Below are positions 1 through 49,931 of a stretch of 64,000 bases of DNA, one piece after another. A program made the translations under genes and the position numbers. The stretch covers positions 186,001 through 250,000 of the forward strand of contig NIVC01000269.1 of assembly GCA_002269645.1 (NCBI GenBank), in the 5' to 3' direction. The notes below the pieces were generated by a model. It was not told where the DNA came from, made no database searches, and saw only the letters and a list, made by a program, of their open reading frames with translations. Each line of letters begins with the position of its first letter. Position 1 is the first letter of the stretch. Origin of the DNA: Macrostomum lignano (lineage: Eukaryota).

Positions 1-199
1 CAGAAGCAGCAAATATGGTCCAATGTGTGCCGATCAACACTGCGCCTCAGTGCGGCCTTGCCAAGCCTTCGGGTGTCAGCAGCACGTCGACCGACTGTGC
101 GGGAAACATGAGGGTATGGCAAAAAATGCTTGTTCGGGTGTCCATAGTCTTCCGGTGCCACTCGGGGGAGTGAGTCTAGCTGAGGATGTCCAGCAGTTG

Positions 200-1265
200 C
201 CCTGTGAAAAATGATCGCTAGCCTTTCGCCAGCTAAATAGTAGCGAAATTTCGCCGGCGAAATGGTAACAGAATGTCACTACTATTCGCCAGCGAAATGC
301 CAGCAAATTTTTCCTGTAAATCGCCGCTATTTTGCCAGGATTTAGCTACCCTCTAATTTCTTTATGAATTCACTTTTATTGATTTGATTTGCACGAAAAG
401 CATTTTTAATGTAATATTACTGTTGTTTGTATTGTAACTCCTGTTTATGTGAGAAGTTAACCCCCTAACCCCCTTTCTTCAGCCGAAAATAAGCTTTGAA
501 GTATAATAAAACTGCGGCTGCGGTTTGCGCTAGGCTTGCCTTGAGCAAACCGGCTTTAGTGCCCAAGCGCGCTGCGTCTGTGGTGCGCCCCCCCGCCGCG
601 TGTGTACGTTCTGTGTTGTTTAGGTGGGCGCCCACCCCTCCGCCGGCGGGGGGGGTATTTTACTCCAGCCGCGCTGCTGAGTTGGCAGTGTTTTCGCGCA
701 GTTCTCGCAGGCCTCGTTACTGCTTTCGCTTTCGCCAACATCAGGTATTCGTGTTTTGCTTTGGGGCACTAATGTTAGATTTAGAAATATCATATGTCAA
801 TGTTTTGAAAAAAAGAAATATATTAATATACTGCATTATATATTATACGAGCTAAACAAAGAAAAATGAAAAAAAATGCTGTCATGTGCCAAATTGGCAC
901 CAACCTGGAGCTGGAGGGCTGCATGATATTTAAGTTAGTTTTGGGCCATTACCAAGCAATGGTTATGTATGCACTGCATTAAACTGGAACTCAATAAAAT
1001 GATAGGCAACATGCAATAAGTTAAAATTTTTACATTATGTGCAGAAAATTCATAAATTAAAACTTATAAAATGCCGTATAACTTTATACAATTCTTCATA
1101 TTTTATTATTCTTGAGTGTTTTTGTCCTCAGCATTATTGGCACTGGTCTTGTTGTCACTTGATATAATGGCCATGCAGGAAGCCTGGCGAAATTTTTGAT
1201 TTCGCTATGTCTGCGCTACCAAGCTAGTGTTTCGCCGGCGTTTCGCCAGCTCATTTTTCACAGGG
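200..1265. mobile_element. Non-autonomous DNA transposon (CACTA/CMC-like MITE)
   Basis: Perfect 15-bp TIR CCCTGTGAAAAATGA (200-214) / TCATTTTTCACAGGG (1251-1265). TG flanks both sides (2-bp TSD). Subterminal TTCGCC(A/G)GC repeats at about 225-297 and 1185-1250. No transposase. Confidence 0.7.
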
Positions 1266-2354
1266 TGAGGTTTGCTCACTGTCGAGGCTTGATCAGCGAA
1301 ACTAGAGAAATTCGCGATCAGGTGTCCATAGTCCACTGGTGCCACATGTTGAATGTCCAGAAGCTCCGCCTGGGTGACCAACGAAGTCAGAGCTGATGCA
1401 GACACATGTGGTCGACGTGCTACTGAAATTTGAAAGCTTGGCGAGGCCGCACTGAGGCATAGTGCTGATTGGCGCACAGGGGTGTACTGAATACACTGGC
1501 GCGGATGGGAAAAATCTGACAGAATCGTTGAATATCTCGACAGTCCAGAGGGCTGGCGACTTGATTCTTGTTTGAGAAGGTGTGGAAAAAAATGTTAGCT
1601 CGGGTTCTTGAATTTCGCGTGACTGCGTTGCCATACATACGCAACCTCCAAATTCAGTCGGCCGTGCAACCTAGTTTTAAGCAAGAAATGCGACTTATTT
1701 TTAAACCAAAAATGCAACTTACTTGGGGTCGCGACAGTAAAGGACTTTTTTTGGGGGAGGGATCGTGACAAAAATGATCCTTTTTTGAGGTCCCGTTAAA
1801 AACAGCCTTCTGTTGTTTTGTTTTAATGTAAGTACATTAATACAATTCTAACTTTCCTTCTTTCTTTTCCATTTTTCTATACCTTACACTTTAACCTCAG
1901 GTGTCCTCAGGACTTCGCTTCCTGATTGGCTCCTTGCTACCGACGAGGAATGCTAAATGAATTGAACACGAAAAAACCTCTGCTGGGCAGCTGGGGTACA
2001 CTTAGTTGCCTCTGGCTGCGACATGGTCTCTGTTTTTGCTTCTTTCCCTTTGTTTTTCTCCTTCCCTGCCTCTCTTTTCCCTCCTGTCACGCTTTTTTCT
2101 TTCTTATTCCCATCCTTTTTCGTCTAATTAGTTGGCCGCTTCGGCCGACTCGTCCGACTGTTGCGCATGTATGTGCGTTGTTCCGTTCCGGCACAGGAAA
2201 ACAATTATCAGGGGGAATCCCCCCGTTGGTAGTTCTACTGGCAGAAAAGGTATTCCTACTGTTAATTACTACATTAGAAGAGGAAGAGCAAAATAAAGGG
2301 TAATGTTTTCCTTACAATGTTCAATTCCTTAATTCCTTACAAAATTCATTTCAG

Positions 2355-3782
2355 AAGTCAGCAGGCTAGCCCTAATTCTCACTGAAAATAGATTCACTGA
2401 AGAACCCTCTGTCACCAACGTCAAAGACATTCTCACTAATAGCGGCTTTAGGGTTGAATCGAACGTGCTGGGAAATTATGCTCAAGACATAATATCGTTC
2501 GTGCCTGATGAAATTTGTCGGTCGACAGTTCAGCAGTTGATCATTATTGTGATCGCCAACGCTCAATATCCGAAATGCATGGATGATTTCCTGAAACTGA
2601 TGACTGACGGTGGATTTTTCGACCTTCAAAAGCGCTTTCTCTTATTCTGCAGAGTTTCCAATGGTAATGAAAACACCAGCGACTTGCAGTTGCAGAGAAA
2701 ATTTTCTAGCAATAGTTTCAAGTACAAGAGCGCAATCGTTGGGTACAAGTTTGACGCCGAAGAGAAAATAAGAAACTTCATTAACTGGCTCGCTCAAGAA
2801 ATGAACACTTGCTGGAACAATAGCTGCCTATCAGCCATGCTTAGCAGATGGTTGCCAGCTCATGATGAAGAAGATTTGTACATGTATCCAACAGGAAAAT
2901 GCAAGCGACCTTTCCTACGGGACATTTTATTTCACCTTGATAATCGAGAGCAGCAAGAAGGTAACGGCCCGATGGCAGCTGGAGCCGAGGGCCCGATGGC
3001 AGCTGCAGCCGAGAGTCCGATGAATGCGACAGTCGACAACGACCAGATTGCTTCCCTGATTTACCCGAACAAGCGCACTCCCACCAAACCCCAAGCTCTG
3101 ATCATTCTCTATTTCAACAAGAGTGCAGCGCCGTGCGAGTCTCTCCAGGCCGACTGTTTGCGGCTGATGAAATTATTCAAGTTTCGCCTTGGCTACCTCG
3201 TGACAGATATTCAAGTTGATTCAGAGAGCCAGAACGATCTTGAGGACAGAGTGAAGAGCTTCGCAAACCAACAAGATCACGGTGACTCGTGCGTCCTCAT
3301 TATTTTGTCACTGTCGAACGGTCTGCTGTGTGGCCACTCCATCATCAATCTTTTTAGCCAGATGTCGCTCAGCAAGCAGCTAAAAGGCAAACCGAGGCTG
3401 TTTCTTTTGAATGAGTGGCAGAGTGGCGCACAGACTGGCCGACTTGCTGATCCAGCCAGTCCGAGCGAAGCATTTGAAATTTTGCCAGACACTGTCAGTT
3501 CAATGGAGGACTATTGGGGCACCAGAAATGAGACATCTAAAGTTCACCCCTTTAGTGGAATGGTATTCGGCCTTGCCTCAGCAAACAATGAGACAGATGT
3601 AGATGGGAGTGATTTTGTTAGAACGCTCTGCACGACCTTTGAGAAGTTCGGTAGCACTAAAGACGTAGTGTCCATGAGTGCCATAATTAATGAAGAACTG
3701 TCAGTTTCTGCTAAAGCGTTGCCTCGCTGGATTATTCAAACAACGAAACTTTTTTTCATCACAAATACAGGTGGACTGGAAA
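2355..3782 (+). CDS. Gene A exon: degenerate caspase-fold domain plus catalytically dead pseudo-caspase domain
   Basis: The reading frame is open upstream of the GTG at 2465 (VSRLALILTENRF...). Caspase motifs PQALIIL, HGDSCVLIILS-LS (His replaced by Leu, 3311), KGKPRLFLLNEWQ (Cys replaced by Trp, 3416), GSDFVRTLC. As an unspliced ORF it runs to the stop at 3838. Confidence 0.85.
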
Positions 3783-6700
3783 GTAAGTTTCCCAATCTTC
3801 TTATAACTTATTCTATTCCCTTGTACGAGCGTAGTTGAAGATTTAGTATATTGTGATTGTGCATTATTTGGTATAATTTACATTTACATTTCATTGCCTG
3901 TGTTTCTCACAAATTTGTCTTTCTTTATTAATTTCAACCTACAGCAACAAGTCAAAAAGTTTCACCTAATGGGCCTCAAGACAACGGTGAGAAAATTTAT
4001 ACTGACAGCATGAGCTACGTTCAGTTATGTACTAACTTGAAGAGTTGATATTTATAGATAACATTTGAAACTATTAAAAATTTCTAAGAAAACATTACAA
4101 ATGCATTTTCAGCTTGCACCAGTGAGAGAAACAAAGCTGGTAAGTTGGAACAATCTAGAATAATTACGAGTTCTTGACATTTGAATTGTATGTGGTTCGC
4201 GACTGCATGTTGCAGAAATTTTTCCGCCTTACTTAAAGGCGCACAACTCGCTCAGCAATCACACCACACATACAGGTGACTGCATGGCGATAGGGACAAG
4301 GGGAAGGAAAGGGAGAAGGGGAAGAGGGAGAGGAGAGGGAGTTGGTGAAACAACTTGAATACTTGTTTTAGTTAGCCGAGAATTCCTAAAGGGAAAGCGA
4401 TAGCGACGACAATTTATATATTTGATAAATCAATAGAAAAGGAATAAAACGTGAAAATGAAACTTTGCGTGTGTGTACAGTAATCAATGTACGCAAGGGA
4501 ATAAAAGACCGCGCACGACACAGGACAACCACCCCAAACCCACGCAAGCACAAACAAGACCGCGCTAGCTCACACCACCACTGTGGGGACGGAGGAAGTG
4601 AGAGGAGAGATCAGGGAGAAATAAGGTAAGGAGGAAGGAAAAACGGGACTCGCACTACTGATCAAGACCAGTCGAGTAGGGAGCATTCCGGACCAATGTC
4701 GCCCGACCCACACTACTCGTATGACTGGCATCCAGTTCCAGAGCTGAGCAGAGTCAGCCGCCTCCTGATTAGAGGGCTTTCACAGCTGACAGGAAAGCCG
4801 GAAGGAGAAGTGGGATTGGTTGGGGAAACAATGGAGATGGGACAAGGGATCGACAACGCTCACCCAACCGCCCAGACGGTCGAAGCAATCCAAACTGCCA
4901 CCACTTGTGGCGCTCCTAGTTGCCACCTTGGAACTTTAGAGAAACGAGTCCCCGAATTTCTACTTCCAACTTAGCCAATACAACACGCGTTCAGAGGGCT
5001 CCGTGCATTTCCGTTTTAGACTAAGTTTAGCTCAGAATGAAGTCACAATCAGATCGGGTTCACGGGATCACTCGATGTTCAAGCACGAGGTCTTTGCTCA
5101 AGCCGAACTGAGAGCTACACGTATCAACAATTGATTCTGACTAACCGACTGAGGACCCTAAAGCAGCCTGTTGTGAGGCAGATGAAGCTGATCCTCGTAA
5201 AAGCGTATTAGCTGACTCAGGAGCGAGAGCCCAAGCAGGCTGGCCGACACGCGAAGGGGAAGACGGGAAAATGAGCAATGAGCAGAAGCTCGGGTATTGA
5301 GCATTCGGGTAGCTAATAAGGGGAGATATGCAGGTCATACAGTAAAGACAACGAAGACAATATAGGAGGGAAGGCTCGAAGATAGCTGTGCACCATTTGA
5401 TAAATTTCAGGCTGTGGGTCATATATCGGTTAGAACAGAGGAACATCGGTTACAGACTCTATAAACTTGCAAAACTGCAATTAGCCTACCCAAACCTACA
5501 TGACTTGGGTAGAGGATCGGGAGCTACGAACGACTTCTGCTCCATCTATGAGGCTTTTCAAATAGTCGATTCTAGAACCAGAATCCGTTCTGAAATTCCA
5601 GGAAATGAAACAGTAAAATTCTCTAGCCCCTATAAACAAGAAAAGAACAGACAGTAGATAATTTGATTACATATGACAACTAACAAAATGATGGCAGAAA
5701 ATCAAACACTCAATATCATATTGTAGCGGCAGACGGGCTCGAAACAGACAGGGAGGCCATGTAGACAGACCGAACAGTGCATGCGTCTGCACGCTATCCC
5801 CCTGTTTGCTTTGCTGGGGTGGGCGCTCGCCCCAGACAGCTCCTGGTTTGTGACTCACGCCCCTTTGTTCGCACCTCCCCATGCTGGCTGTTCCCCTTTT
5901 ACAAATAAAACAAATAAAAGCGATGCACTTCTGCTTCGTCTGGTCTAACGCTTCTTGCAGACCACTAAAATATTATATACTCCAGGAAAGAAGTATAGAA
6001 GTATAGTTTTACTACTTGGATTCACAGATATTCAGAACCGATTTGGGTCCTGTAATTGGCAATTTGAAAAGCCTATTTAAACTTTTAAAAATGGGCAACG
6101 AATGAGAAATTACTGAGAAATTCTCCGACTCCAACTGACCGTCTATCACATCACTTTGCCGTCTATTGAGTGTACCTGAATCTAACGCATTGCAGCCTTC
6201 TTTGACGCTAGTAAAAAGTACTTAATACGAGTATGTTCTCTACAAAATTTCAGGTCGAACTGGTGTTGCCTTGATTTTCACAGAGTATTTATTCGATGCT
6301 GTCAGAAACTACCAAACGTTTCTTGAGTACGCAAGCTTTAAAGTACACGTGGACCGCACACGTGGTGACGTGGAATCGTTAAGAAAAGCGTTCGATTGTG
6401 AGAAAGACCATTTTCAAAAAGACCTCGTAGTTATTGTTGTCGTGCGCCAACGTCATAGCGATGGGGATCTGTGGCGAATAATCCGCGATATTGGTATCGC
6501 GAGATCGACAGAAGCTCGCCACAGCATACTGCTTATCTATTGCGAGGTCTATGACACCGAAGAATCTTCTCAGAGGGAGTTACAGGTAGCCCGGCAAGTA
6601 GAAAACTTGCCTGACAAGTTCAGCATGGCCTGTTTCTTTGGCAATGAAGAGGAAGTCAAAGAATTTCTTGACTCATTGCTCCAAGATGCGAGGATGTCAG

Positions 6701-7722
6701 AAAGCCTGAATGGAATTTCCGTTGTTGGCAGAAATTTTCAAGACGGGCGCACCTCTCAAAGAGAGAACTTCGTGTTCAAGCGTAATGATGAAATCCCAAA
6801 ATGGGCAACGGGAAGAGTGATTAAATGGCTAGGCAACTATACTATCAAATCAAGTGTTCAACGATCTACTACTGCGCAGGACGACACCGTTCAGTCAGAA
6901 GTTGTAGTTGATGAGTTCCGACTGTCCGAAACGCGGAAGAGATGGCACCCAAAGCTCCCCCCAGCAATCGAATCCACTTCAGAATGTGTCAGAGCACCCA
7001 GAGCACTCATCGTGCACAATGTTATCTTCAAAGAGAAACTAAGCGCTAGGCTCGGTAGCCAGCATGACTGTCAAAGGCTGACAGAGAGTCTCCTAAGACT
7101 CGGCTACAAGGTCTCGATCAGGTCGAATCTCAACGGAGCTGAAATTAAACACGAAGTTAAGAAGTTTTCCGAAGAGTCTGACGACGGCAGGTCATCTGTC
7201 GTTGCGTTTATGTCTCACGGACGCCTCGGCGAAGTCTTCGGCTCTGATGAAGAGCCTGTAGGAGAAAAAGATGTATTACAACTTTTCTCAGATGAATCAG
7301 GGACAAAAGACAACTTTCAGCTAGCCATATTTCAGTGCTGTCGTGTTCCAGGTCAATTACCAGACGAGGTGTCGTGTCTGGCCTTCTACCCGGGTATGAT
7401 AATCGCTCACTCTACCCTGCCAAATGACTTCAGTCTGCGTGTGAAGAGCAAGGGCAGCCGGTTCATCCAGAGCTTCTGCACAGTGCTGGATCTTTTTCCT
7501 CACAATGACATTGTAACGATCATTCCTCTGGTGAATTACTTAATGCTCAACTCGATTTATCAAGGATTCAGTCAGCAGCCTTGGTGGTTTGTTCAAAGCG
7601 GAAAAAGGTTCTGGCCCAAAGTTCAAGGTGCTGGTGAAAATTCACAAAATCCGTCAGAATGCAACAATGCTTTTGACTTACAGGAGTTACAAATAATTAT
7701 CGAATCAGATCACCAGGATTAG
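2355..7722 (+). CDS. Multi-caspase-domain protein A (degenerate fold - pseudo-caspase - degenerate fold - active caspase), about 980 aa plus unresolved first exon
   Basis: Predicted exons 2355-3782, 3945-3986, 6254-7722. All junctions are phase 1 and in frame: acceptor ttcag at 2354, donor A|GTAAGT at 3783, acceptor ctacag at 3944, donor G|GTGAGA at 3987, acceptor tttcag at 6253. Joined read: ...ITNTGGLE-TTSQKVSPNGPQDN-GRTGVALIFTE... Confidence 0.72.
6254..7722 (+). CDS. Gene A terminal exon: degenerate caspase-fold domain plus caspase (peptidase C14A) domain with intact dyad
   Basis: RALIVHN, ARLGSQHD, FMSHG (His 7216-7218), IFQCCRV (Cys 7339-7341), MIIAHST, SLRVKSKGSRFIQSFC. AATAAA at about 7926. 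Confidence 0.9.
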
Positions 7723-8145
7723 CCTGCAGTTGAGGATCGTGGAGCAGCCCCTGTTCCAGGTCATTGATACCCTGTGTGGATCATCGGGCAGAGCATGATG
7801 ATCTTAATGCGGTTGATTCACTAACTTCTAATGGGATTCGTCTGACTGATGACGCTCCTGATGCTCCATATAATTCTAAAAGTTGTGCTGGAGTGGACAG
7901 CCCTATCCAACTGCGTTGAGTATATAATAAAGCTCCATAAACTATAGTTTTTTATTATCAGCATATGCGGCGACAAGACAAAATTGATTAATGCGCAAAA
8001 GTAAGAGTAAATTTATTTATACTATAATATAGCACGTTTTTTAATAATTCTCACCCATTGTTAATTGTTGTAATCCAATTATAGGTAAATGTAATACAAA
8101 TCAGAAATTCTCCATAAAGTACACTGGCAGATCTAATGAGGGATC

Positions 8146-8619
8146 GAAGCTACTCCGTACGTTGCTTGGTCCACTACACCCCAAGCACAGCAGCACCTGG
8201 TACATTAAATAGACTATTTTATTTCAAATATTCCCATTCCTACGGACATATTTCTTGCTATGGCTTGCCCCTCTCGGTTGTTCTGCGAACGCGTCCGCGC
8301 AAAGTCTAGCTAGATCTCTTTTTGTCTGTGCTTTTGTCTGCGTCGCTATATATATATGGCTGAGACTCAGACACCGGGTCCTTGGTCGGTTTAGGGGCAG
8401 ACATAGAAACCGTCCAGCCAAACCTGTCTAGCTAGAGCACATAAAATTGAAATTGAAATAAAAAATGATTGCAATTGAATAGCCGCGTGTAAGCCGAAGA
8501 CACAAAAGGGACAAAATGTGTTTATTGAATCCTTGTTTTTTATTCGCACACTATCTTTTACCTCGCTCAACGATTTGCTTCTAACCTCTTTACACATTAT
8601 CGTTTAGTTCGTGTGGTTG
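8146..8619 (+). repeat. Interspersed repeat, copy 1 (second copy at 16804-17173)
   Basis: Near-identical from GAAGCTACTCCGTACGTTGCTTGG to TTAGTTCGTGTGGTTG. This copy has an extra 96 bp (8266-8361). Confidence 0.9.
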
Positions 8620-9431
8620 ATTAAAAAACCTGTACATATTTTATTATTTATACCGGAAATTTTCAACACATTTTTCTTGAACAAATTTTTTATTTGTATT
8701 TAAATCCTTTATACCGAATTTAAGCTCAGATCGCGTCATTAACTTAGCTAAAAACAATTGTTTAAAATAACTTTCACATTCTTGCTATTTGAGAATTAAT
8801 CTGACGTCAACTACTTGAACTAATAACGTTCCGCAACTATTGCGATGACTTTTTAATAGAAAGTTTTTACTGCTCAATGTATGAAGCTTAACGTATTTAG
8901 TTAATAATTATTAGTACTATTTTTTTCAGCCAGCTATCATTAACAATCCTCGGCTAGCTCTTGATTATGAGCAATTTACGGTTAATTATTTGTGAAGTTC
9001 CACTGTCCTGCTGTTTCTGTCGCTTAACAGTTTTTTTCTAACAATACAGCAAAAAATGCTTCATCATTCACCTCAAACCGTTTCAATTGACTTTCATTTT
9101 CTACGAGCAGAAACGTGTTAAATAGAAACTAAATTTAGATAGAGATTTAGGTATATTGATTTAGCTGTTTCAAAATGCTAAGACAGTTCGGAAGTCAAAA
9201 GATAAATCTGAGAGCACACAAATCAACAGTTTTCTAAAATAAAAATCACTCGTAAAATCACTTTATGCACTGTCAGGTAGTTCAGGCAAGTGTTTTGTAC
9301 TCGTACTGCAAACAGCTAAATTTCATAACAATTTGCTACCGAATTTATGCCCCTTTTCAGCGAGAATTTTTCAAAGGCAACTTGAGAGATTTAAAACAAA
9401 TAAAAACATCCGTTGATTTCTATCAGAAAAC

Positions 9432-11965
9432 ATGACGAAAGACGCTTCAACTTTTATTGGTAAGGGGTTCGCTTTCTTCATAAATTTTCTATAGCTGACG
9501 AAAGATCTATAAAATACGTATACTTGAATAAACGTTTAAGCCGAAACTTTTAGAACGATCGTATGGCAACCGCCCAAAACGAGACAATTTTTTTAATTTT
9601 TACCCTTTCAGATCATCGCCGACTGCTGCTGGTCTTCGCTGATGAACACAAAGACATGCTGATAAATTATACCGAGTTTATGGAGAGTAAATGCGGATTT
9701 TTTAGGAAGACATTTCCCCTCGCAAACATTTCTGACGGCTTTGCTGAACTCGACAGCGGTCCAGTCATTCAAGTTGTCTGCGCCGTCGTCTGCTCGGAGA
9801 CATCCGCATGCAACATGGAAGACTTCCTGAAGCCTCTTATTGCTCGGTTTGGGAAAGATGTCGATCAGCTGCTGCTGTACTGCAGAGTCTGTGATGGCAA
9901 CCCAAATGAGAAGGATGAAGAATTAAAAAGTAAATTCAACGCCAGTGGATTCGAATACAAAAATTCGACAATTTCTTACATTGCTGACAGTTCTGACAAT
10001 ATTAGAAAGTTCCTAAGTGACAGCCTAATCAAACAGAAGACCAAGCAATGGAATGCCGAAACTTGTGCAGCTGATGTTCTTTACAACATTGAGGGTTTTG
10101 AAAAATTGTGCGTACAAAAGACAAAGAATTTTTTGCGACACATCTCGGAACCACATACGTCTGGGCAATCTGGCGCCATTTCATTCGCTGAGCCGTTTAC
10201 CAATCATATCAACACACAGATCACCGACAATTCGTTGATTTATCCTAATAGTCGTGAAACTTTTCCGAAGGCTCTTATCATTTTAAACATCTACCCAGAA
10301 AAGAATATCAGCAAAGCAATGCTCACGGACTGGAAGCGTCTGCTGTGGCTGTTCGACAAACTGCAGTTCAAAGTCACAGATGTGCAAACCGACGCCAGTA
10401 CTGAGAACGCAGCAGAAACCAGTGTGAAGAATTTTGCAAACTCTGAATACCATGGAGATTCGTGCGTCTTAGTGATTCTGTCTGAGTGCAAGTTCAGCCA
10501 AAACTTTATTCGCAAAACCAGCGACTCTATGGCAGCTGGCGAAAAACTCCAGGACAAGCCCAGACTGATCATCCTGCAGCACTGGGAGACCAAACCGCCA
10601 AGTGCCGATGGCGCGCCCGCTGGACTTTCCCAGTTCGTGCCGGCTATTGTTGACTCAATCCGGACCCGCCGCAAACACACAATGCCTGAAGTGCGAGTTC
10701 ATCCGCATGGCGGAATGATTTGGTGCCAGCCGGCTGCTGCAGACTCCGACACTGATGACGGCAGCTCACTTGTTTGGGCGATCTGCGACACCTTCATCAA
10801 ATATTCAGCCACTGAGGACGTGGTGTCAATGATTTCGCTGATCAATGAGAAGCTGAAGGCCTCGCCTCCACTGTGGTGTGTGCAGACTACCAAGTATTTC
10901 TTCATCACAGACACCAGTCGTCCATTGAATAACTCACGTGAGTACCTTTTTTGAGCTTATTCAAATTATACTTCGTATTATTATATTCCATAACTTATCT
11001 TTCGACTGTGAAATCGTTTTGTCGAATTGTGCAGTTGCTCTGTGATTCGGAATTACGTGCATTATTACTAACCAGAACAGGTAGAAAAGAGCAAATGTAT
11101 TCGTAATTACGTTAAATCAGCCAGCACAAAAAGGTAGCACAATAAGCTAATGAGGGTCAGTCGATGGAAAATCTTAAACACTATTTCAGTCTAAAAGCTG
11201 CCTCATTCCATCGATAAAATGTCTCTTAAAAAACCTTTTTCAGTCGAGCCACCTTCCACTAAAGAAAGCGCAAAAGCGGGTCTCGCCTTAATAATTAATA
11301 ATTACACATTTAAGAACGACTGTACTGGTAAATTTGTAAGAGAAGGAAGCGACATCGATCGTGAAAAATTGAAAAGTACTTTCAAAAAGTTTGGTTACGA
11401 CACTAAAATTGCGGAGGATCTCAGTGCAGAGAAAGTTCAATCTGAAGTGAAACAATTTGCCGATGATAGCCGTCACGGTGACACCTGCATTGTGGTCATC
11501 ATGTCCCACGGAAAACTGGGAAAAATCATTGGAGTTGATCACGCGGAAGCGTCGGAAACGAAAATCCTAAAAATACTGAACGATAGCAAAAGCCTTTCAG
11601 GAAAGAAAAAACTCGTCATATTTCAGCTATGCCGAGATCACCCAGATGGAAGCCCATCGAGCAATTCTGCAGACCATCCCACTCGACTGGTCTACCCGGA
11701 CATGATCGTGGCGCACTCGACAAGCATAGGTGAAAAAAGCTTTCGCAGCACAGATCAAGGCAGCCGGTTTGTGAATAGCCTGTGCGATGCTCTTGACAAG
11801 TTCGGGAAAGGCTCAGACATCGTCTCGCTCATCAGTGCCATCAACTGCATTATGATGAGAAGTTTTTACGATGAAACTAGTACAATTAAAGATGACACCC
11901 AGCTGCCCTTCTGGCTGGTGCAGACCACGGGCCCTTTTGTTCTCGCCAATCTTACGGATGGCTGA
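9432..11965 (+). CDS. Multi-caspase-domain protein B (degenerate fold - pseudo-caspase - active caspase), 691 aa
   Basis: Predicted exons 9432-9459 (MTKDASTFI, donor G|GTAAGG), 9612-10937 (acceptor ccctttcag, donor C|GTGAGT) and 11244-11965 (acceptor cctttttcag). Both introns are phase 1. Total 2076 nt = 691 aa + stop. Confidence 0.75.
9612..10937 (+). CDS. Gene B exon: degenerate caspase-fold domain plus pseudo-caspase domain (paralog of 2355-3782)
   Basis: SLIYPN, PKALIIL, HGDSCVLVILS-EC (His replaced by Glu, 10484), KPRLIILQHWE (Cys replaced by Trp, 10583), RVHPHGGM, WCVQTTKYFFIT. Alignable by eye along its length to the gene A exon. Confidence 0.85.
11244..11965 (+). CDS. Gene B terminal exon: caspase domain with intact dyad (also readable as a 248-aa ORF from ATG 11219)
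   Basis: GLALIINN, VREGSDID, IMSHG (His 11507-11509), IFQLCRD (Cys 11630-11632), DMIVAHST, SFRSTDQGSRFVNSLC. Confidence 0.92.
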
Positions 11966-12930
11966 GAAGTCGCTCGCACTGGTTCCGATAAGGGCTTTGG
12001 CATCCGAATAAGGGCAAAATGCATGACAGACACTCGCAGTGTTAATTTTTTTATTTATATCACTAATTCAATTTTAGCTTCTAAAACATTGTTTTTAAAC
12101 AATCATAAGCCCTACCGTCAGTAGAATTTTTTTGACATTTTGCGTTTTTCAGTCGGTGCTTGCGCGATATTTATTGGTTTATAGACGCACAATTTTCTGA
12201 TTGTTGCAAATTATAGTGCCTCTACTTTTACCATGGCCAAATGTGCCAATGGATTGATTCTGTTCTACGCGGCCACCCACATTGAAATAAAAAAATTAAG
12301 AAATAAAAAATACCAGGGAGCGGGCACCCTAGCTGCAGTCACTGCAAATGTACAAGCTTAGATTGCTTCCTTCATCATCACAATCACAATATACTAAATC
12401 TTCATCACAATATACTAAATCTCTAAGGTTTGTTTGTTTTACCGGTATCACAATATACTAAATTTCTAACGTTTGTCTGTCTTATACTTTAAATCTCTAA
12501 GGTATGTCTGTCTGACCGGTATTCCAGTCTACAGCCTGAATGCCTGAACCGTTTTTTTTAACATGCTTTATTCAATTGCAAATTCTTGTGAGATTTTGTG
12601 GATTTAATTGTGAGGCAGAATCCTTATAAACTATGTATATTACTTATAACAGTAGTTAAACCCGAGTTTTAATCACAGCCAATCAGAAATTTTCTTCCCC
12701 ATTTGTTTAAATTCTCCAAGCAAATCAAATTCTTTTGTTATAATTTTAGTAATTGTTAAAATGCGTCCCACCTTCCCCAAATTTTCTGTATATATGGAAT
12801 CAGGTTGACGCTAGAAAAATATAACCTCGGCGATCGTTCTCAATAATTGCCTTTAACTATTCTTGCGAGAATCTTTTAGCGAAACAAATCTAAATTTGGC
12901 TAAGACTTATCTCGTTATTTCTTTCATAAG

Positions 12931-13060
12931 ATAGGGAAACCAGAGGTCGTGGAGACCCAAAACCAGGACTCTAGATAGGGAAAACCAGAGGTCGTGGAGA
13001 CCCAGAACTAGGGATCTGGTTAGGAAACTTGAGGTCGTGGAGACCCAAGAATAGAAACCT
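12931..13060 (+). repeat. Three degenerate tandem copies of a ~45-bp unit (GAGGTCGTGGAGACCCA core)
   Basis: The core motif is visible three times. Confidence 0.75.
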
Positions 13061-13834
13061 GAGTAGGGAGATCGAGATCGTACAGATCCTAAGAAAGCCG
13101 TACAGGCCAATAATAGGCATTAGGCATTAAGAGATTAGGTATTAGGGAAGTAGATTAGTTACCGCTGGACACCCTTGATCCCTGGAAAACGCTAGACTTT
13201 CGGACTGAACTAGTAGGGAATTAGACAGTGTCTTACCGCTCGGGCACTACACTCTATCGCAAGGTTTCTAGGAAATCGTGTGAAATTAGAAATCTCTAGG
13301 AAAGAGTCATAGATTAGGGCTGCCAACGCTACTCAAAGTAGATATATTAGTGACAATTTATAGGATAGAGAAATTAGAACTAAAGGACTGCAGCAAATTG
13401 GTGAGATAATTTCAGTAGGAACCAGAAGGGCTAGCACAATTGCATTGAAAAATTCGAATGGGAAAGTGGTTAAATATTCGAAAAACGAGTTTTCCCAATG
13501 CTTTCAATCGGAGGCTAGAAAAGGTCAAAATCTCGACTAACTGAATAGCAATTCCAATTAAGATTGCGCCACAACTTTTCTCTTTTCACTGTGTAGGCCT
13601 CAATACAGGCTGCCGTGTGCAGCGGAGAGGAAAATACACAGTGGCTGCGTGTGTACATTCTGACCCTGGCTCTGACTCCATAGAAAATTGCTATTTATAG
13701 ATCTCACTCAACTGTGCATTGGCTCTGCCTGCATACAACCTGTGCACACTGAGCAAGCCTATCACTGCTATGAACATGTATTTGACTGCAGTGCCGAAGC
13801 ATATATGGCAGATTTTTGTGCTCTCCGATCAGTA

Positions 13835-13917
13835 GGTGGAATAGCCGAGGTGTAGGCACTAGGATTAGGTTTAGTCTCGGCATAAGGTCCAAGGTTCGAG
13901 TCTGCCTCCTCGGCGGA
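13835..13917 (+). pseudogene. tRNA-Leu(TAG)-like sequence (pseudo-tRNA or SINE head)
   Basis: A-box TAGCCGAG, 3-bp D stem GCC/GGC, anticodon arm CTAGG-ATTAGGT-TTAG (with G-U pairs) carrying TAG, long variable region, B-box GGTTCGAGTC (13893-13902). The T stem and acceptor stem pair poorly. Confidence 0.55.
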
Positions 13918-14431
13918 TGATTAAAATCAAATAAATTTATTCATATATAGCTTGGACCTCAACTAATTGGAATATTTTTTGTTGAATTAGCAAAGCAAAG
14001 CCAGCTACAGTGAGAGGCCTGCAAGTTAATGCATTGAAATTAAAAACCAAGCCAATGCCCAGGACTAATTGAATAGCGACACCCGCCCCTCAATTTCAAT
14101 ATCAAAAATGTGTTGCGCAACCTTTCAACGCTTGTAGCTCTCCACGCGAGTGTAGAGAACCAATGCTATAGTTGGCACTGAGTTATGATGCAATACAATT
14201 GCATCGACAGTCAGAATGCTTCTCAATCAAAAAGAAACTGTTTGAACTTTAAAAAACGGGGCAAAAAATCGAGTTTTTCGAATATTTAATCCCGAAAAAA
14301 TTAAGCATTCCTTTGCAAAAAATGGTGTACCAGCGCTCCATAAATACGCATCGAATGCAGAAAACCCCACAAAATTCTGACTACGCAGAGTCAAGTTAAA
14401 CGAAGGTTCCTATACATATATATAGATAGAT

Positions 14432-15010
14432 AGGTAGGTAGGTAGGTAGGTAGGTAGGTAGGTAGGTAGGTAGGTAGGTAAGTAGGTAGGTAGGTAGGTA
14501 GCAGGGGCGTAGCCAGGAAATTTGATTGGGGGGGCCGTGAGTTAGGGGGCGCCAGCTTCTTATAGGGGGGCGCCAGTTTCTTTTAGGGGGGGGGGGGCGC
14601 CAGTTTCTTATAGGGGGGGGGGCGCCAGTTGCTTTTAGGGGGGGGGCAGTTTCTTATAGGGGGGCGCCAGTTTCTTTTAGGGGGGGGGGGCGCCAGTTTC
14701 TTATAGGGGGCGCCAGTTTCTTATAGGGGGCGCCAGTTTCTTTTAGGGGGGGGCGCCAGTTTCTTTTAGAGGGGGGGCGCCAGTTTCTTTAAGGGGGGGG
14801 GGGCGCCAGTTTCTTTTAGGGGGGGGGCGCCAGTTTCTTTTAGGGGGGGCGCCAGTTTCTTTTAGGGGGGGGGCGCCAGTTTCTTTTAAGGGGGGGCGCC
14901 AAGGCCAGAGTTGGTGATTGGGGGGGGGGCCACGGCCCCCCTTGCTCCCCCTCTGGCTACGCCCCTGGTAGGTAGGTAGGTAGGTAGGTAGGTAGGTAGT
15001 TAGGTAGGTA
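14432..15010. repeat. (TAGG)n microsatellite interrupted by a MITE
   Basis: TAGG runs at about 14432-14501 and 14968-15010. Confidence 0.9.
14502..14967. mobile_element. hAT-like MITE with an internal G-rich minisatellite
   Basis: Perfect 15-bp TIR CAGGGGCGTAGCCAG (14502-14516) / CTGGCTACGCCCCTG (14953-14967). GTAGGTAG flanks both sides, consistent with an 8-bp TSD. Internal GnCGCCAGTTTCTT(T/A)TAG repeats. Confidence 0.8.
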
Positions 15011-15399
15011 CATAGATTTTATTTTTAGTATGGTTGGATTTTTAGTATATCTGACTAGCCATTTAGCCTTTCTCCGGGTGGCTTCTTAGCAGTTTTGCGC
15101 TTGTCTATAAGCAGTTTTGTACAGTCGCTGAGCAAATGCCACTAATCTGAAAGCAGTTTTGCAGTAGCAAATATCTCAGCAGTTTCAGACCGAATTATAC
15201 TGAGTTACATTTCTTAATGTTTGTAACTTTGCGATGTCAGTTAATTAAAAGGTCTCTTACGGCTCGTATAGTTATTCTATATTTTTTGTCTAAGTTAGTC
15301 TTGTTTTCACAATATTAAATTTCGCACTAGTTGCACGATAAACCTGACATGAGGATTACCATCAGAGTTGCTCTACTCTCCCCAGTTTGGCACCACTCC

Positions 15400-16620
15400 C
15401 ACCCTGATAAGCACACCACTCCCACCTTGATTAGCACCACTCCCATCTGATTAGCACTCTCCTCACAGATTAGCACTGCTCCCACCGGGATTAATATCCA
15501 CTCCCTCAGATTACCCCCACTCCATACATTAGCACCAATCCTCCAGATTAACACTACTCCCCATATTAGCCCCAATTCTCCTATATTTGTCCCACTGTTA
15601 GATTAGCCCCACTCCTTCAGATTTGCACTACTTCCATCAGATTAGCACCAGATTATCACCACTCCTCCAGATTAGCCTCCCTCCCCAGATTAGCACTGCT
15701 CCCCAGATCAGCACCGCTCCACAGATTAGCACCGCTCCTCAGATTAGCACCGTTCCTAAGATCAGCACCGCTCCCCAGATTAGCACCGCTCACCAGATTA
15801 GCACCGTTCCTAAGATCAGCACCGCTCCCCAGATTAGCACCGCTACCCAGATTAGCACCGCTCCTCAGATTAGCACTGCTCACCAGATTAGCACCGCTCA
15901 CCAGATTAGCACCGCTCACCAGATTAGCACCGCTCCTAAGATCAGCACCGCTCCCCAGATTAGCACCGCTCCCCAGATTAGCACCGCTCCTTAGATTAGC
16001 ACCGCTCACCAGATTAGCACCGCTCCCCAGATTAGCACCGCTCCTCAGATTAGCACCGCTCACCAGATTAGCACCGCTCCTCAGATTAGCACCGTTCCTA
16101 AGATCAGCACCGCTCCCCAGATTAGCACCGCTCACCAGATTAGCACCGTTCCTAAGATCAGCACCGCTCCCCAGATTAGCACCGCTCACCAGATTAGCAC
16201 CGCTCCTTAGATTAGCACCGCTCACCAGATTAGCACCGCTCACCAGATTAGCACCGCTCCCCAGATTAGCACCGCTCCTCAGATTAGCACCGCTCACCAG
16301 ATTAGCACCGCTCACCAGATTTGCACCGCTCCTAAGATCAACACCGCTCCCCAGATTAGCACCGCTCCTAAGATCAACACCGCTCCCCAGATTAGCACCG
16401 CTCCTAAGATCAACACCGCTCCCCAGATTAGCACCGCTCACCAGATTAGCACCGCTCACCAGATTAGCACCGCTCACCAGATCAGCACCGTTCCCAAGAT
16501 TAGCACCGCTCCTCAGATTAGCACTATTTCCCCCCAGATTAGCACCACTACCCCAGATTAGTCCCACTCTTCCAGATTAGTCCCACTCTTCCAGATTAGT
16601 CCCACTCTTCCAGATTAGTA
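15400..16620. repeat. 18-bp minisatellite (CCAGATTAGCACCGCTCC) with degenerate flanks
   Basis: Dozens of directly visible units; they explain the STAPQI and SGANL ORFs. Confidence 0.95.
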
Positions 16621-18330: not shown

Positions 18331-19120
<790 letters not shown>

Positions 19121-20417: not shown

Positions 20418-23400
20418 TCAATGCTCGTTTAAATCGCCCAGTAGCTGGCCAACATCCTCTCGGACGCCATCCTTGATGTCCTTGGCGGCATCGAGACCCC
20501 GACGAACCGCGGCCGAGGCCGACTCTCTGAGATCGTCGCCGCTGTCGTCTTCTCCGCCGGATGAGGAGCCGAAAAATCGAATCAGAAGGCGGTTCACCTG
20601 ATCCGGGGCGTCCTGCTGCACCCAGTGGCTGGCCTGGGGCACCAGCTGGAACTCCATCTGACTGCAGTACTTGCCTGCATGTTATGGGAGTGGCGATTGA
20701 TCGAAGCTATTCAAAAAGATACCAACTTGGGAAGCGCACTAGTTGGGAACCCGGCGATTTAGAAACCCTTCGATTTAGAAACCTACTATTAAGAAACCCT
20801 ACTAAAAAATTTAGGAAATCTACCATTTAGAAACCATGAGACATGACTTATATGTTACTCGTAGGTACCCTACTATTAGGTAGGAACCCTACCGTACTAT
20901 ATAAGAACCACAAAGTTTAGGAACCCTATCATTCAGGAACCATACAATTTAGGAACCCTACAATTTAGGAACCCTACAATTTAGGAACCCTACCATTCAG
21001 GAACCCTACCATTCAGGAACCCTACCATTCAGGAACCCTACCATTCAGGAACCCTACCATTCAGGAACCCTACCATTCAGGAACCCTACCATTCAGGAAC
21101 CCTACCATTCAGGAACCCTACCATTCAGGAACCCTACCATTCAGGAACCCTACCATTCAGGAACCCTACCATTCAGGAACCCTACCATTCAGGAACCCTA
21201 CCATTCAGGAACCCTACCATTCAGGAACCCTACCATTCAGGAACCCTACAATTTAGGAACCCTACAATTTAGGAACCCTACCATTCAGGAACAATACAAG
21301 ATTGGAAACTAGAAAAACCGTAACAGAGTTAAAGGACATACGGGCACTGCAATAAGCAACTGTCTTTATTCGAAACTCACCAGACAATTTAGCCGCTTCC
21401 TGCGTGATGTACTTATCGTTGGCGCCAAACACCAGCATGGTTGGCACTGTAAGCTGCTTCCTGCTGCCGCCTTCGGCGCCCCGGCTAGGATAGCGGAACG
21501 CGGCCCGGTAAAAGTTAATGGGCCCAGTTAGAGCCGTAGCCGACGAGAAGGTGTACTTGAAAGCGTCCAATTCCTGTTGGTTAACAACGCCTTTCAAAGC
21601 GATGTCCATCGAGACGAGATCTTGACGAGTAATGAGCCATTCCGGAAAGCAAGGCAGCTGGAAGAAGAACATGTACCAAGACTTGAGGAACTGGGTCAGA
21701 TTCGAGCGAATGTAGGTCTGGAATGCCACGGGATGTGGGCAGTTGAGTACGGCCAGTTTGGTGACCATGCCCGGGTGAGCCATGGCGAACGACCAGACAA
21801 CTGCGCCGCCCCAGTCGTGACCAGCCAAGTAGCACTTGTCGTAGCCTGGTGTTGGTGAAATAATTTTTGTTCTTATCTAGTTTACGATTACTCAATCATA
21901 ACTCTTATAATTACTGCATTACTGCCCATTCCGCCGACTCCCCGAAGCAGGCACACAAGCACGCGGATACGTACGCAGTCATACGCGCAGGCACACACTC
22001 ACACAGGAGTGTACAGCGGCCCTAACTTTATTTATCGTTAGGCATGTACACTTCACTGTGCCCTTAAGGGCGTTAACTCCACGAGCAGAGCCAAGCCGAG
22101 ATTCCAATTTAGCCCCAAAATTAATGCAACTACACTTGGAATCGAGCCTGGGCCGCTGGTCCATAAGTGCGCCAGGATAAACCACTAGTCCTCTCCCAAA
22201 TCATCACAACTATGATTGTAAAACTCAACAGCCTATCAGTAAATCACAGCCTTTGTTCAAAGTGAAATATTAAGCTACAGGAAACGCAAATCTTACCCAA
22301 AGAGTTAATAGCCTGTCGGATATCTTCAACCAGTTTTTCAATTCGATAATTCTCAACGCCGCGCGGCTTGTCGCTGTCGCCGTAGCCGCGCATGTCTATG
22401 GCCACAATCCTGTGGGCGAGGCGAGAATTAACAAGATTAAGATCTGGGCACTACCATTTCGCTCACCCCTGAGCACACACACGCTCACATAGGGTGTGCG
22501 CTACTTAGTACTCTTAGTAAACTACTGTTAGTAGCTCGTAATGTGCTGCAGATGCAGGTTTATTTTAATTGATTTAAAATTTCACTAACCTGTAATTCTT
22601 AGCCAGATCGCTGTCAAGCTGATGGCGCCAGCTGAACCAAAACTCTGGGAAGCCGTGCACCAGCAGTAGGAGGGGTTTCCGGGGATCGCCATTCTCAATG
22701 CAGTGCAGAGTGATGTCCTGTTAAGTAAAGTTAAACAAATACATGCAAGTGGAGCAGGTTAAGACATTAAAACATTACAACAAAGCAGTTTCATTAGCCA
22801 TTACGGGGACACTATTTTCATGTTGAGTGGTTCCCAGCAAATCAGTGTCAAGTAGCGCCAAGGGCCAAGGCGATACTGTAAGGTGGCGCCAAGGCTATGA
22901 TATGGGATGGCGCCAAGGCTATTATGTAAGGTGGCGCCAAGGCTATGATGTAAGGTGGCGCCAAGGCTATACTGTAAGGTGGCGCCAAGGCTATACTGTA
23001 AGGTGGCGCTAAATACTTTCGCTAGCCAATTCTGCGGGTGAAGATTCAAAGTCGCTTTTTTTCAAAAAGCTCGATGTTCACGAGCAGAATGCATGACTGC
23101 ACTTGGAGGGGCTTGTGTTGTTTTGCGTGATAGAATTGCATCAACGAGTGTCCACTTTTGACTTTATCATATTATCTTAACTCACCAATCGACTGAAACA
23201 GTCTAGTCAAAGTCCGACTGTAATAAAACTTCACTTAGTAAACAAACTTTGAACGCGACGCTCAAGTGACGCCCATGTCTCAGTGTGCAGTGTTTAGTTA
23301 ATCAAAATAAAAGTCCCAGCTGATAAGGCGGGGTCAGCTTTTAATCAGTCAACAGTGGCACTTGTTTTGCGAGTGAATCAAGTCAAACCCAGTCAGCTCA

Positions 23401-43948: not shown

Positions 43949-44010
43949 TTGGCTTCTTTCTTCTTTGAGCTGCAATTTGACGTTGTCGAGGGGATAGGGT
44001 TGCGTCAGAA

Positions 44011-47047: not shown

Positions 47048-47962
<915 letters not shown>

Positions 47963-49470: not shown

Positions 49471-49928
<458 letters not shown>

Positions 49929-49931
49929 TCT

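What the first reader, a model, noticed from the sequence alone, without database searches (positions are those of the whole stretch)
2355..11965. Two tandem genes encoding single-chain pseudo-caspase plus active caspase proteins with no death-fold prodomain
Seen in sequence: the four caspase-like ORFs alternate dead-active-dead-active. Canonical splice sites join them in frame into gene A (fold-pseudo-fold-active) and gene B (fold-pseudo-active). Only the last domain of each keeps the SHG His and the QxCR Cys. No CARD, DED or DD is visible. Established: caspases activate as dimers; cFLIP-L regulates caspase-8 in trans as a pseudo-enzyme; separase and TPR-CHAT/Csx29 carry a pseudo-protease domain in cis. 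Inference: these are p20/p10-type caspases with a built-in pseudo-caspase partner. It may act as an intramolecular heterodimer partner, an autoinhibitor, or a decoy sensor for pathogen caspase inhibitors or proteases. I do not know of a described caspase family with this architecture.
Basis: partly seen in the sequence, partly recalled or inferred. Interest (0 to 1): 0.92.

Follow-up and report, generated by a model that had tools for sequence, protein, structure and literature searches.

The report
Flatworm caspases with built-in dead caspase
Two neighbouring genes of the flatworm Macrostomum lignano each encode one protein chain holding a dead caspase domain followed by a live one; this layout is real, but it is already known from corals and mammals, so the new part is an unusual non-death-fold front domain.

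Summary
The window is Macrostomum lignano contig NIVC01000269.1. Four + strand ORFs each carry a Pfam Peptidase_C14 domain in the order dead, active, dead, active. The dead domains have lost the catalytic His and Cys (Cys to Trp) and both Arg residues that bind the substrate Asp; the active domains keep all four. RNA-seq-derived GenBank models support the splicing into two genes. A 99%-identical copy of gene A and a 42%-identical paralogue join the dead and active halves in one transcript.

Corrections: gene A has an extra 27-nt microexon (4113-4139) and no identified start codon. Gene B starts at 9432, not 9563.

The novelty claim fails. Single-chain pseudo-caspase plus caspase proteins are published (coral caspase-X 2016, with functional data; mammalian caspase-16 2025) and are frequent in predicted insect and mollusc proteomes.

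What seems undescribed is the roughly 150-aa flavodoxin-like module, present in three copies here, that takes the place of a CARD or DED. The 'fold + caspase' exon, flanked by phase-1 introns, looks duplicated and fused. Whether the two caspase domains pair within one chain could not be tested (AlphaFold pTM 0.37). Verdict: new variant of a known kind, moderate interest.

The parts
2355..3782 (+). Gene A, first recognisable exon (phase 1 in, phase 1 out): flavodoxin-like fold A1 plus pseudo-caspase A. The 5' end and start codon are unresolved.
   Evidence: Acceptor cag|AA at 2354/2355 and donor AAA|gtaagt at 3782/3783. The frame opens at 2333 and has no ATG.
2357..2851 (+). Fold A1: about 150-aa flavodoxin-like alpha/beta module
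   Evidence: Fold HMM hit, E 3e-64. An AF2 model of the homologous gene B module has pLDDT 80.7 and five beta-alpha units.
3083..3766 (+). Pseudo-caspase domain A. The His position is in LSLSNG (3305-3322) and the Cys position is Trp in LLNEWQ (3404-3421). Both S1 Arg are lost.
   Evidence: Pfam PF00656 at 41.4 bits; alignment and HMM columns.
3945..3986 (+). Gene A microexon 1 (42 nt, phase 1-1)
   Evidence: Splice sites read. Its peptide TTSQKVSPNGPQDN is present in the GenBank protein P0006 of the duplicate locus.
4113..4139 (+).
   Evidence: Present in P0006. Found in the window with ttcag| and |gtaagt sites. The spliced CDS translates without a stop.
6254..7722 (+). Gene A last exon: fold A2 (6256-6741) plus active caspase A (6934-7626), with stop codon. 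SHG lies in 7210-7230, QCCR in 7330-7347, S1 Arg in 7042-7059 and 7429-7446.
   Evidence: Acceptor ttcag|G at 6253/6254. Pfam 103.8 bits. RHCR read-out. The first ATG-coded Met is at 6625, inside fold A2, so this ORF cannot stand alone with a whole fold.
9432..9459 (+). Gene B exon 1 (MTKDASTFI), the GenBank start
   Evidence: P0001 N-terminus mapped. The GenBank gene range equals window 9432-11965.
9612..10937 (+). Gene B exon 2: fold B (9612-10093) plus pseudo-caspase B (10262-10858). The His position is Glu in LSECKF (10478-10495) and the Cys position is Trp in LQHWET (10574-10591).
   Evidence: Pfam 28.3 bits. Fold HMM E 4e-59. Alignment. Donor C|gtgagt at 10937/10938.
11244..11965 (+). 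Gene B exon 3: active caspase B, with stop codon. SHG lies in 11501-11521, QLCR in 11621-11638, S1 Arg in 11333-11350 and 11738-11755.
   Evidence: Pfam 128.3 bits. Best PDB sequence matches are caspase-7 and caspase-3, E 2e-22. The junction is used in GenBank protein P0001.

Best explanation
Shown: window 2355-11965 holds two tandem paralogous genes of Macrostomum lignano, members of a lineage-specific caspase family with at least five paralogue groups. The family's building block is one large exon that encodes a roughly 150-aa flavodoxin-like module followed by a caspase domain, and that is flanked by phase-1 introns. Inferred origin: tandem duplication of this block, followed by in-frame splicing from just after the first caspase domain into the second block, produced fold-caspase-fold-caspase chains (gene A, P0003, P0159). 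Loss of the inner fold gave fold-caspase-caspase (gene B). In every such chain the upstream caspase domain lost the catalytic His and Cys (Cys to Trp or Tyr) and both Asp-binding Arg residues, but kept its core strands and the alpha5/beta6 region. The downstream domain keeps the full Asp-specific catalytic set. Inferred mechanism, by analogy with coral caspase-X and with cFLIP-L/caspase-8: the dead domain is a built-in partner that pairs through beta6/alpha5 with the live domain of the same chain. This gives a one-active-site pseudo-dimer that does not need death-fold adaptors to be brought together. The dead domain restrains the live one until the disordered linkers (between the domains and between the subunits) are cut or an unknown signal acts on the flavodoxin-like module. 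The biological role, cell death or immunity, is unknown.
For: Domain identity and residue states. Fusion into single transcripts: GenBank models P0001 (this locus), P0006 (99% copy) and P0003 (42% paralogue) all span dead plus active, and these models derive from genome-guided RNA-seq assembly (PMC5730564). ORF1 and ORF2 lack usable ATG starts. Module and duplication: there are three fold copies in the window, and the fold also precedes a single active caspase in P0011/P0152. Introns before fold 1 and fold 2 sit at homologous positions, all in phase 1, in gene A, gene B and P0003. Maintenance of the dead domain: it is an intact ORF in four paralogue lineages at 41% mean identity; beta3 (0.71) and alpha5 (0.65) are among the best conserved segments, beta6 scores 0.51, and the substrate loop L3 is among the worst (0.24). 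AF2 secondary structure shows the full caspase topology in both domains. Mechanistic analogy: removing the dead domain of caspase-X increased cell killing, and caspase-X was modelled on the cFLIP/procaspase-8 beta6 interface. The same idea has been proposed for caspase-16.
Against: Core strands are conserved in any fold, so the conservation pattern is weak support. The window versus L003 comparison (99% identical) has no power to show purifying selection: coding divergence is 0.50% and non-coding 0.59%. Gene A has no identified start codon and is not annotated at this locus. ORF4 has its own ATG at 11219, so a stand-alone active isoform of gene B is possible. StringTie models can merge adjacent genes. 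No expression or functional data were found for these genes.
Confidence: 0.55

Rival explanations
1. Four or three separate genes: the dead and active ORFs are independent tandem paralogues, and the fused models are read-through or assembly artefacts.
For: ORF4 has its own ATG at 11219, 25 nt upstream of the acceptor. A stand-alone 318-aa caspase (P0008) sits next to P0003 at the paralogous locus. Several multi-caspase models in other species share clusters with about 300-aa single-caspase models, which suggests fused predictions. StringTie can merge neighbouring genes.
Against: Three independent loci give the same fused architecture from RNA-seq-based models. All junctions are canonical, in frame and phase 1, and their positions are conserved at 42% protein identity. 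ORF1 and ORF2 have no ATG that would allow independent translation of intact domains.
Confidence: 0.1
2. The dead domain is a decaying relic with no function. The proteins work as ordinary caspases that homodimerise between chains through the live domain, and the dead domain and folds are merely a long prodomain.
For: All catalytic and S1 residues are gone and loop L3 is degenerate. The 99% copy at L003 carries frameshifting indels in fold A1 and in gene B. The caspase-16 authors also raise intermolecular dimerisation as an alternative.
Against: The dead domain is an uninterrupted ORF of about 230 codons in at least four paralogue lineages that diverged to about 41% identity, with conserved motifs (HGDSC, KPRL, VHPxSG, EDVVSM, WxxQT). 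A neutral relic would have accumulated stops. The L003 indels may be PacBio assembly errors.
Confidence: 0.12
3. Sensor or decoy model: the dead caspase domain or the flavodoxin-like module baits pathogen caspase inhibitors or proteases, and their binding or cleavage releases the live domain.
For: The family is lineage-specific, expanded and tandemly arrayed, as is usual for immune genes. Ten nonsynonymous and no synonymous differences cluster in 180 nt of fold A2 between this locus and its 99% copy, which could reflect diversifying selection.
Against: The substitution cluster could equally be a gene-conversion tract, and it lies in the fold, not in the dead caspase. No pathogen, inhibitor or expression data exist. 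The neighbouring genes (hydrolase, ankyrin, cadherin) are not an immune cluster.
Confidence: 0.1
4. The flavodoxin-like modules, not the dead caspase, are the key regulators: they oligomerise or bind a ligand and so replace CARD/DED-mediated proximity activation. The dead domain is then only a spacer or scaffold.
For: The fold also precedes a single active caspase with no dead domain (P0011/P0152), so it is the ancestral prodomain of the family. It models confidently as a compact domain. No death fold is present.
Against: No ligand-binding motif or family match was found. Gene B lacks the inner fold, so its live domain is directly preceded by the dead caspase.
Confidence: 0.13

Closest known systems
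Acropora caspase-X (AmCaspase Xa-Xd; Moya et al. 2016, BMC Genomics 17:62, PMC4715348)
   Same: One polypeptide (721 aa) with an N-terminal caspase domain lacking His and Cys, followed by a typical active caspase domain. It has no death-fold prodomain and belongs to a multi-copy, lineage-specific family. The dead domain is proposed, and partly shown, to restrain the live one through a cFLIP/caspase-8-like beta6 interface.
   Different: It is cnidarian, and no close relationship to the flatworm family was seen: all close relatives of the flatworm proteins found here are Macrostomum proteins, though no phylogeny was made. No flavodoxin-like module has been described in it, and no fold-pseudo-fold-active four-module version. 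Here the Cys is replaced by Trp or Tyr.
Mammalian caspase-16 (Eckhart et al. 2025, J Mol Evol 93:395, PMC12198278; review PMC12292325)
   Same: The prodomain folds like a caspase domain and arose by duplication of the caspase-coding exons. The catalytic dyad is lost in the N-terminal copy and kept in the C-terminal copy. An intramolecular pseudo-dimer has been proposed.
   Different: It is a vertebrate protein of the caspase-14/15/16 clade, with many small exons rather than one large module exon. It has no extra alpha/beta module and its function is unknown. The flatworm dead domain retains an inter-subunit-linker-like insertion, whereas the caspase-16 prodomain has none.
cFLIP-L / procaspase-8 heterodimer
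   Same: A catalytically dead caspase-fold partner pairs with one live caspase domain to give a single-active-site dimer with altered activity.
   Different: cFLIP-L acts in trans and is recruited by tandem DEDs. Here the partner is in cis and there are no DEDs. According to PMC11463336, FADD was not detected in platyhelminths and DED caspases are lost in the parasitic ones.
Multi-caspase-domain predicted proteins of insects, molluscs and fish (e.g. Graphocephala A0A1B6LB92, Anabrus XP_068084304, Mytilus XP_071176331, Thrips XP_034246694)
   Same: Two or three Peptidase_C14 domains in one predicted chain, often with one domain lacking His or Cys.
   Different: The order varies (dead-active, active-dead, active-active). 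Some are probably fused gene models. None carries the flavodoxin-like module, and none has been studied experimentally as far as I found.

Membership tests
Caspase family (MEROPS C14A / Pfam PF00656) | Peptidase_C14 domain above Pfam's gathering score | tested here: met
   All four ORFs score 41.4, 103.8, 28.3 and 128.3 bits against a 21.4-bit cut-off. The full-length model matches CED-3 and caspase-3/7 structures, E about 1e-11, TM about 0.7 on the target.
Caspase family (MEROPS C14A / Pfam PF00656) | Catalytic His-Cys dyad (SHG ... QxCRx) | tested here: met
   Met for the two C-terminal domains (MSHGRLG/FQCCRV and MSHGKLG/FQLCRD). Not met for the two upstream domains (His replaced; Cys to Trp).
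Caspase family (MEROPS C14A / Pfam PF00656) | S1 pocket Arg64/Gln161/Arg207 (caspase-3 numbering), which gives Asp specificity | tested here: met
   All are present in both active domains by alignment. Both Arg are absent in the dead domains.
Caspase family (MEROPS C14A / Pfam PF00656) | Asp-directed proteolytic activity | not testable with these tools
   Needs recombinant enzyme and peptide substrates.
Single-chain pseudo-caspase + caspase (caspase-X / caspase-16 type architecture) | N-terminal caspase-fold domain without the dyad and C-terminal competent caspase domain in one polypeptide | tested here: met
   Gene B: GenBank RNA-seq-derived CDS P0001 at this locus. Gene A: the same architecture in the 99% copy P0006 and in the paralogues P0003 and P0159.
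Single-chain pseudo-caspase + caspase (caspase-X / caspase-16 type architecture) | Common descent with caspase-X or caspase-16 (orthology) | tested here: inconclusive
   No phylogeny was made. In the exhaustive search all hits below E 1e-30 are Macrostomum proteins, and other animals match mainly through the active domain at 25-39% identity. This suggests independent origin but does not prove it.
Single-chain pseudo-caspase + caspase (caspase-X / caspase-16 type architecture) | Intramolecular beta6/alpha5 pairing of dead and live domains | tested here: inconclusive
   The full-length AF2 model has pLDDT 61.3 and pTM 0.37, so the inter-domain geometry is not reliable. alpha5 and beta6 are relatively conserved in the dead domain.
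Single-chain pseudo-caspase + caspase (caspase-X / caspase-16 type architecture) | The dead domain modulates the activity of the live domain | not testable with these tools
   Shown only for coral caspase-X in HeLa cells.
cFLIP-like pseudo-caspase | Tandem DED prodomain and action in trans on caspase-8 | tested here: not met
   No DED by Pfam. The dead domain is covalently linked to the live one.
Death-fold prodomain caspases (CARD / DED / PYD) | Six-helix death-fold domain N-terminal to the caspase domain | tested here: not met
   Pfam finds none in genes A and B, P0003, P0006 or P0159. The N-terminal module models as five beta-alpha units. Caveat: the first exon of gene A is unknown.
TIR domain (suggested by UniProt's name for relative P0004) | Match to TIR profiles or structures | tested here: not met
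   No Pfam TIR hit even at E up to 10. There is no TIR among the top 50 Foldseek PDB hits.
Flavodoxin-like fold (structural class only) | Three-layer alpha/beta/alpha fold with five beta-alpha units | tested here: met
   AF2 pLDDT 80.7 and pTM 0.79, elements E-H-E-H-E-H-E-H-E-H. The best Foldseek hits are flavodoxins, SIS domains and receiver domains, probability 0.9-0.99 but TM only 0.36-0.51. This is fold-level similarity, not family membership.
Caspase large-subunit (p20)-like origin of the N-terminal fold | Significant profile-profile similarity to caspase domains | tested here: inconclusive
   hhalign gives 61% (E 8e-5, 80 columns) against the seven-sequence caspase alignment and 46% (78 columns, beta1 to alpha3 in register) against a 148-domain non-Macrostomum profile. 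Reversed controls give 2.4% or less. However, a TIR control against the caspase profile reaches 28% on 27 columns, and the signal falls to 0.3-8% with subsets.

The most novel reading that the evidence does not exclude
The roughly 150-aa flavodoxin-like module is a previously undescribed caspase prodomain that replaces death-fold adaptors in a Macrostomum-specific caspase family. It may itself be a third, extremely degenerate caspase-derived (p20-like) module. If so, gene A is a chain of four caspase-derived units with a single live site, built by repeated duplication of one phase-1 exon, and it activates as a self-contained single-chain pseudo-dimer without any adaptor platform.
Probability: 0.3. 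Interest if true: 0.65.

Novelty: new variant of a known kind. Interest (0 to 1): 0.45.

Why it matters
Caspases normally need another caspase molecule, brought close by CARD or DED adaptors, to become active. Chains that carry their own dead partner test whether one live site paired in cis is enough, and how such an enzyme is kept off. Corals and mammals (caspase-16) pose the same question, but caspase-16 is absent from human and mouse. Macrostomum lignano is transparent and regenerating, and has a published transgenesis method (PMC5730564). It could be a tractable animal for testing what a built-in pseudo-caspase does in vivo. The family also shows a clean route by which modular proteases arise: one exon flanked by phase-1 introns is duplicated and spliced in frame. 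It also adds an overlooked prodomain type to the platyhelminth caspase repertoire; a 2024 survey of lophotrochozoan caspases reported only a kinase-like unusual prodomain in M. lignano (PMC11463336).

Tried and rejected
- **TIR identity of the N-terminal fold** (prompted by UniProt's name for P0004): rejected by Pfam, hhalign and Foldseek.
- **Death-fold prodomain:** none found.
- **Sequence searches for the fold outside Macrostomum:** a PDB profile search gave only a designed Rossmann protein at E 0.011. Pfam, PADLOC and NCBIfam gave nothing meaningful. The big-database search with the fold alignment returned nothing, not even the self hits, so it is uninformative. The fold's distribution outside the 150 best hits is therefore untested.
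- **Purifying selection from the duplicate locus:** no power at 99% identity.
- **Intramolecular dimer by AlphaFold:** pTM 0.37, uninformative. Only 10 eligible sequences could be used in the alignment.
- **Upstream ATG exon for gene A:** about 50 ATG...GT phase-1 candidates in 1-2354 and none convincing. The best is 2171-2249, AAG|GTATTC. A spliced-leader-donated start was considered but not tested.
- **Literature search for the gene IDs:** no hits.
- **P0002 and P0160** (UniProt models from an older assembly) skip parts of domains and merge genes A and B. I treated them as poor models and did not use them as evidence.


Full report
**Source and context.** The window is Macrostomum lignano (free-living flatworm) contig NIVC01000269.1 of assembly GCA_002269645.1; window position equals locus L001 position minus 569. 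It is ordinary eukaryotic sequence with many satellite arrays. The neighbouring genes are an alpha/beta-hydrolase, an ankyrin-repeat ORF and cadherin exons.

**Observation.** Four long + strand ORFs (2465-3838, 6271-7722, 9563-10954, 11219-11965) each hit Pfam Peptidase_C14 above the gathering score, at 41.4, 103.8, 28.3 and 128.3 bits. ORF4's best PDB sequence matches are caspase-7 and caspase-3 at E 2e-22. ORF2 and ORF4 keep Arg64, His121, Cys163 and Arg207 (MSHGRLG/FQCCRV and MSHGKLG/FQLCRD). In ORF1 and ORF3 the His is replaced (Asn or Leu in ORF1 depending on the alignment, Glu in ORF3), the Cys is Trp in both, Arg64 is lost and the Arg207 region is deleted. The dead-active-dead-active alternation is therefore real. 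A six-frame HMM scan finds only these four caspase domains in the window.

**Splicing.** Independent support comes from GenBank proteins.
- P0001 (BOX15_Mlig018970g1, 691 aa) is encoded at this very locus (window 9432-11965) and reads ...RPLNNS|LEPPSTKES..., which is exactly the proposed gene B junction.
- P0006 (BOX15_Mlig007987g1, 838 aa) lies at a duplicate locus, L003, that is about 99% identical over window 1-14000. That second microexon is present in the window at 4113-4139 with good splice sites.
- P0003 (BOX15_Mlig020397g1, 1017 aa), on another contig and 42% identical, has the complete fold-pseudo-fold-active layout with a Met start.

These BOX15 models come from a genome-guided RNA-seq assembly (StringTie/TACO, TBONE, TransDecoder), not from ab initio prediction (PMC5730564). 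ORF1 has no ATG at all. The first ATG-coded Met in the frame of ORF2 is at 6625, inside the second fold, so neither ORF can be an independent gene that encodes intact domains.

Corrections and caveats:
- GenBank starts gene B at ATG 9432 (exon 9432-9459, then 9612 onward).
- Gene A's first exon was not found, and gene A is not annotated at this locus.
- The L003 copy has a 1-nt deletion in fold A1, which explains why P0006 starts at an internal Met.

**The N-terminal 'fold'.** An HMM built from seven copies finds three copies in the window: 2357-2851, 6256-6741 and 9611-10093. It also finds one copy in front of a single active caspase in P0011/P0152, which were not in the training set (E 1.6e-16). 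AlphaFold2 on the gene B copy gives pLDDT 80.7, pTM 0.79 and five regular beta-alpha units. Foldseek against the PDB returns only generic flavodoxin, SIS and receiver-domain matches with TM 0.36-0.51.

Sequence methods find no family in Pfam, PDB, PADLOC or NCBIfam. UniProt's name 'TIR domain-containing' for relative P0004 could not be reproduced by Pfam, hhalign (0.2%) or Foldseek.

Profile-profile comparison gives a weak but in-register similarity to the caspase large subunit, with the fold's LLxYCR on the caspase IIQACR in the first comparison.
- Against the seven-sequence caspase alignment: 61% probability over 80 columns.
- Against a 148-domain profile from other animals: 46% over 78 columns, beta1 to alpha3.
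- Reversed controls: 2.4% or less.
- A TIR control against the caspase profile: 28% on 27 columns. With subsets the signal falls to 0.3-8%.

I therefore treat a caspase origin of the fold only as a possibility.

**Origin.** The introns just before fold 1 and fold 2 lie at homologous positions (three to four residues before the first strand) and are in phase 1 in gene A, gene B and P0003. Another intron follows the dead domain by 8-13 residues in all three. Each 'fold + caspase' module is one exon between phase-1 introns. The simplest history is a tandem duplication of that module (or of a fold-caspase gene like P0011), followed by in-frame splicing into the second copy and decay of the upstream catalytic site. 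Gene B then lost the inner fold. This is inference from the anatomy.

**Is the dead domain maintained?** Across four paralogue lineages (gene A, gene B, P0003, P0159) it is an uninterrupted ORF with 41% mean pairwise identity. Conservation is highest in beta3 (0.71), alpha5 (0.65) and beta2 (0.62), beta6 scores 0.51, and it is lowest in loop L3 and alpha3 (0.24 each). Both dead and live domains keep a WxxQT(T/G)K-like motif at beta6. This fits a scaffold that keeps the canonical dimer interface and has given up substrate binding, but the evidence is weak. The comparison with the 99% copy has no power: coding divergence is 0.50% and non-coding 0.59%.

**Structure test of the cis-dimer idea.** Full-length gene B, modelled with a 10-sequence alignment, gave pLDDT 61.3 and pTM 0.37. 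The secondary structure shows the full caspase topology in both domains, with disordered linkers at 179-225, 336-379, 433-462 and 582-600. The model's best PDB matches are CED-3 and caspases 3 and 7. The arrangement between domains cannot be trusted, so this test is inconclusive.

**Comparison with what is known.**
- Acropora caspase-X (2016) is an inactive-plus-active double caspase. Deleting its dead domain increased killing of HeLa cells, and it was modelled on cFLIP/procaspase-8.
- Mammalian caspase-16 (2025) has a caspase-fold prodomain that lost the dyad, and an intramolecular interaction has been proposed.
- The exhaustive HMMER search with P0001 (2990 hits at E 0.001 or better) shows that, apart from Macrostomum paralogues, many of the best 150 representatives have two or three caspase domains. 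Some are dead-active (Anabrus, Graphocephala), some active-dead (Mytilus, Thrips) and many active-active, although some are probably fused models.

None of these has the flavodoxin-like module. A 2024 survey of lophotrochozoan caspases reported only a kinase-like unusual prodomain in M. lignano and no other unexpected prodomain in platyhelminths. No paper mentions these gene IDs. The Macrostomum family is thus a new, probably independent variant of a known architectural theme.

**Verdict.** The most likely mechanism is a built-in cFLIP-like or caspase-X-like partner that regulates the live domain in cis; this rests on analogy only. Interest is 0.45.

Noticed in passing
window 6370-6550 (fold A2) versus L003: Between this locus and its 99%-identical duplicate, 10 of the 11 gene A substitutions are nonsynonymous and fall within 180 nt of the second fold (V538M, E539K, C547R, Q564H, W572L, R576G, A581T, I590T, Y594H, Y598H), with no synonymous change anywhere in gene A. 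Local divergence is about 5.5% against a 0.5% background. This could be a gene-conversion tract from another paralogue or diversifying selection.
   Followed up: partly
L003 (NIVC01000988.1), equivalents of window ~2696, 10541, 10682, 11300-11330, 11873: The duplicate locus carries 1-nt and other small indels that break fold A1 and the gene B copy; GenBank annotates only 325 aa there. These are either PacBio assembly errors or the start of pseudogenisation of one duplicate.
   Followed up: partly
window 2355-7722: Gene A is intact as an ORF here but is not annotated in the GenBank record of this contig, whereas its frameshifted duplicate is annotated. The annotation pipeline excluded transcripts overlapping repeat annotations, and the 2.1-kb intron 4140-6253 may hold one.
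   Followed up: no
L002 7318-8274 and 10001-14194: At the paralogous locus a stand-alone 318-aa active caspase (P0008, single exon, no fold) lies upstream of the four-module gene P0003. Its N-terminal region resembles the linker that precedes the live domain of P0003.
   Followed up: partly
P0153 (BOX15_Mlig031666g1, 745 aa), residues ~440-500: Another family member has a Cys-rich, zinc-ribbon-like insert (CSCAVGSEGFDCTCKKCKD...CVNCKECVRCRD...CKKCG) between the fold and the live caspase.
   Followed up: no
P0004 (UniProt A0A1I8GM93): UniProt names this relative 'TIR domain-containing protein'. No TIR signal could be reproduced for it or for the fold with Pfam, hhalign or Foldseek.
   Followed up: yes
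window 14545-16618, 18331-19119, 20919-21292, 44009-44434, 46021-49944, 51662-54094, 55767-63206: There are many long micro- and minisatellite arrays, for example an 18-mer x65 at 15429-16618, a 12-mer x76 at 47050-47962, 23-mers at 56616-59064 and a 19-mer x67 at 60605-61875. They explain the extreme GC and AT skews in the composition profile and the spurious long ORFs at 15656-16567 and 60496-61975.
   Followed up: partly
window 20418-21965 (-), 30156-32810 (+), 37552-44065 (-): Neighbouring genes are an alpha/beta-hydrolase (annotated in GenBank), an 884-aa single-ORF ankyrin-repeat protein, and several exons with cadherin repeats on the minus strand.
   Followed up: partly
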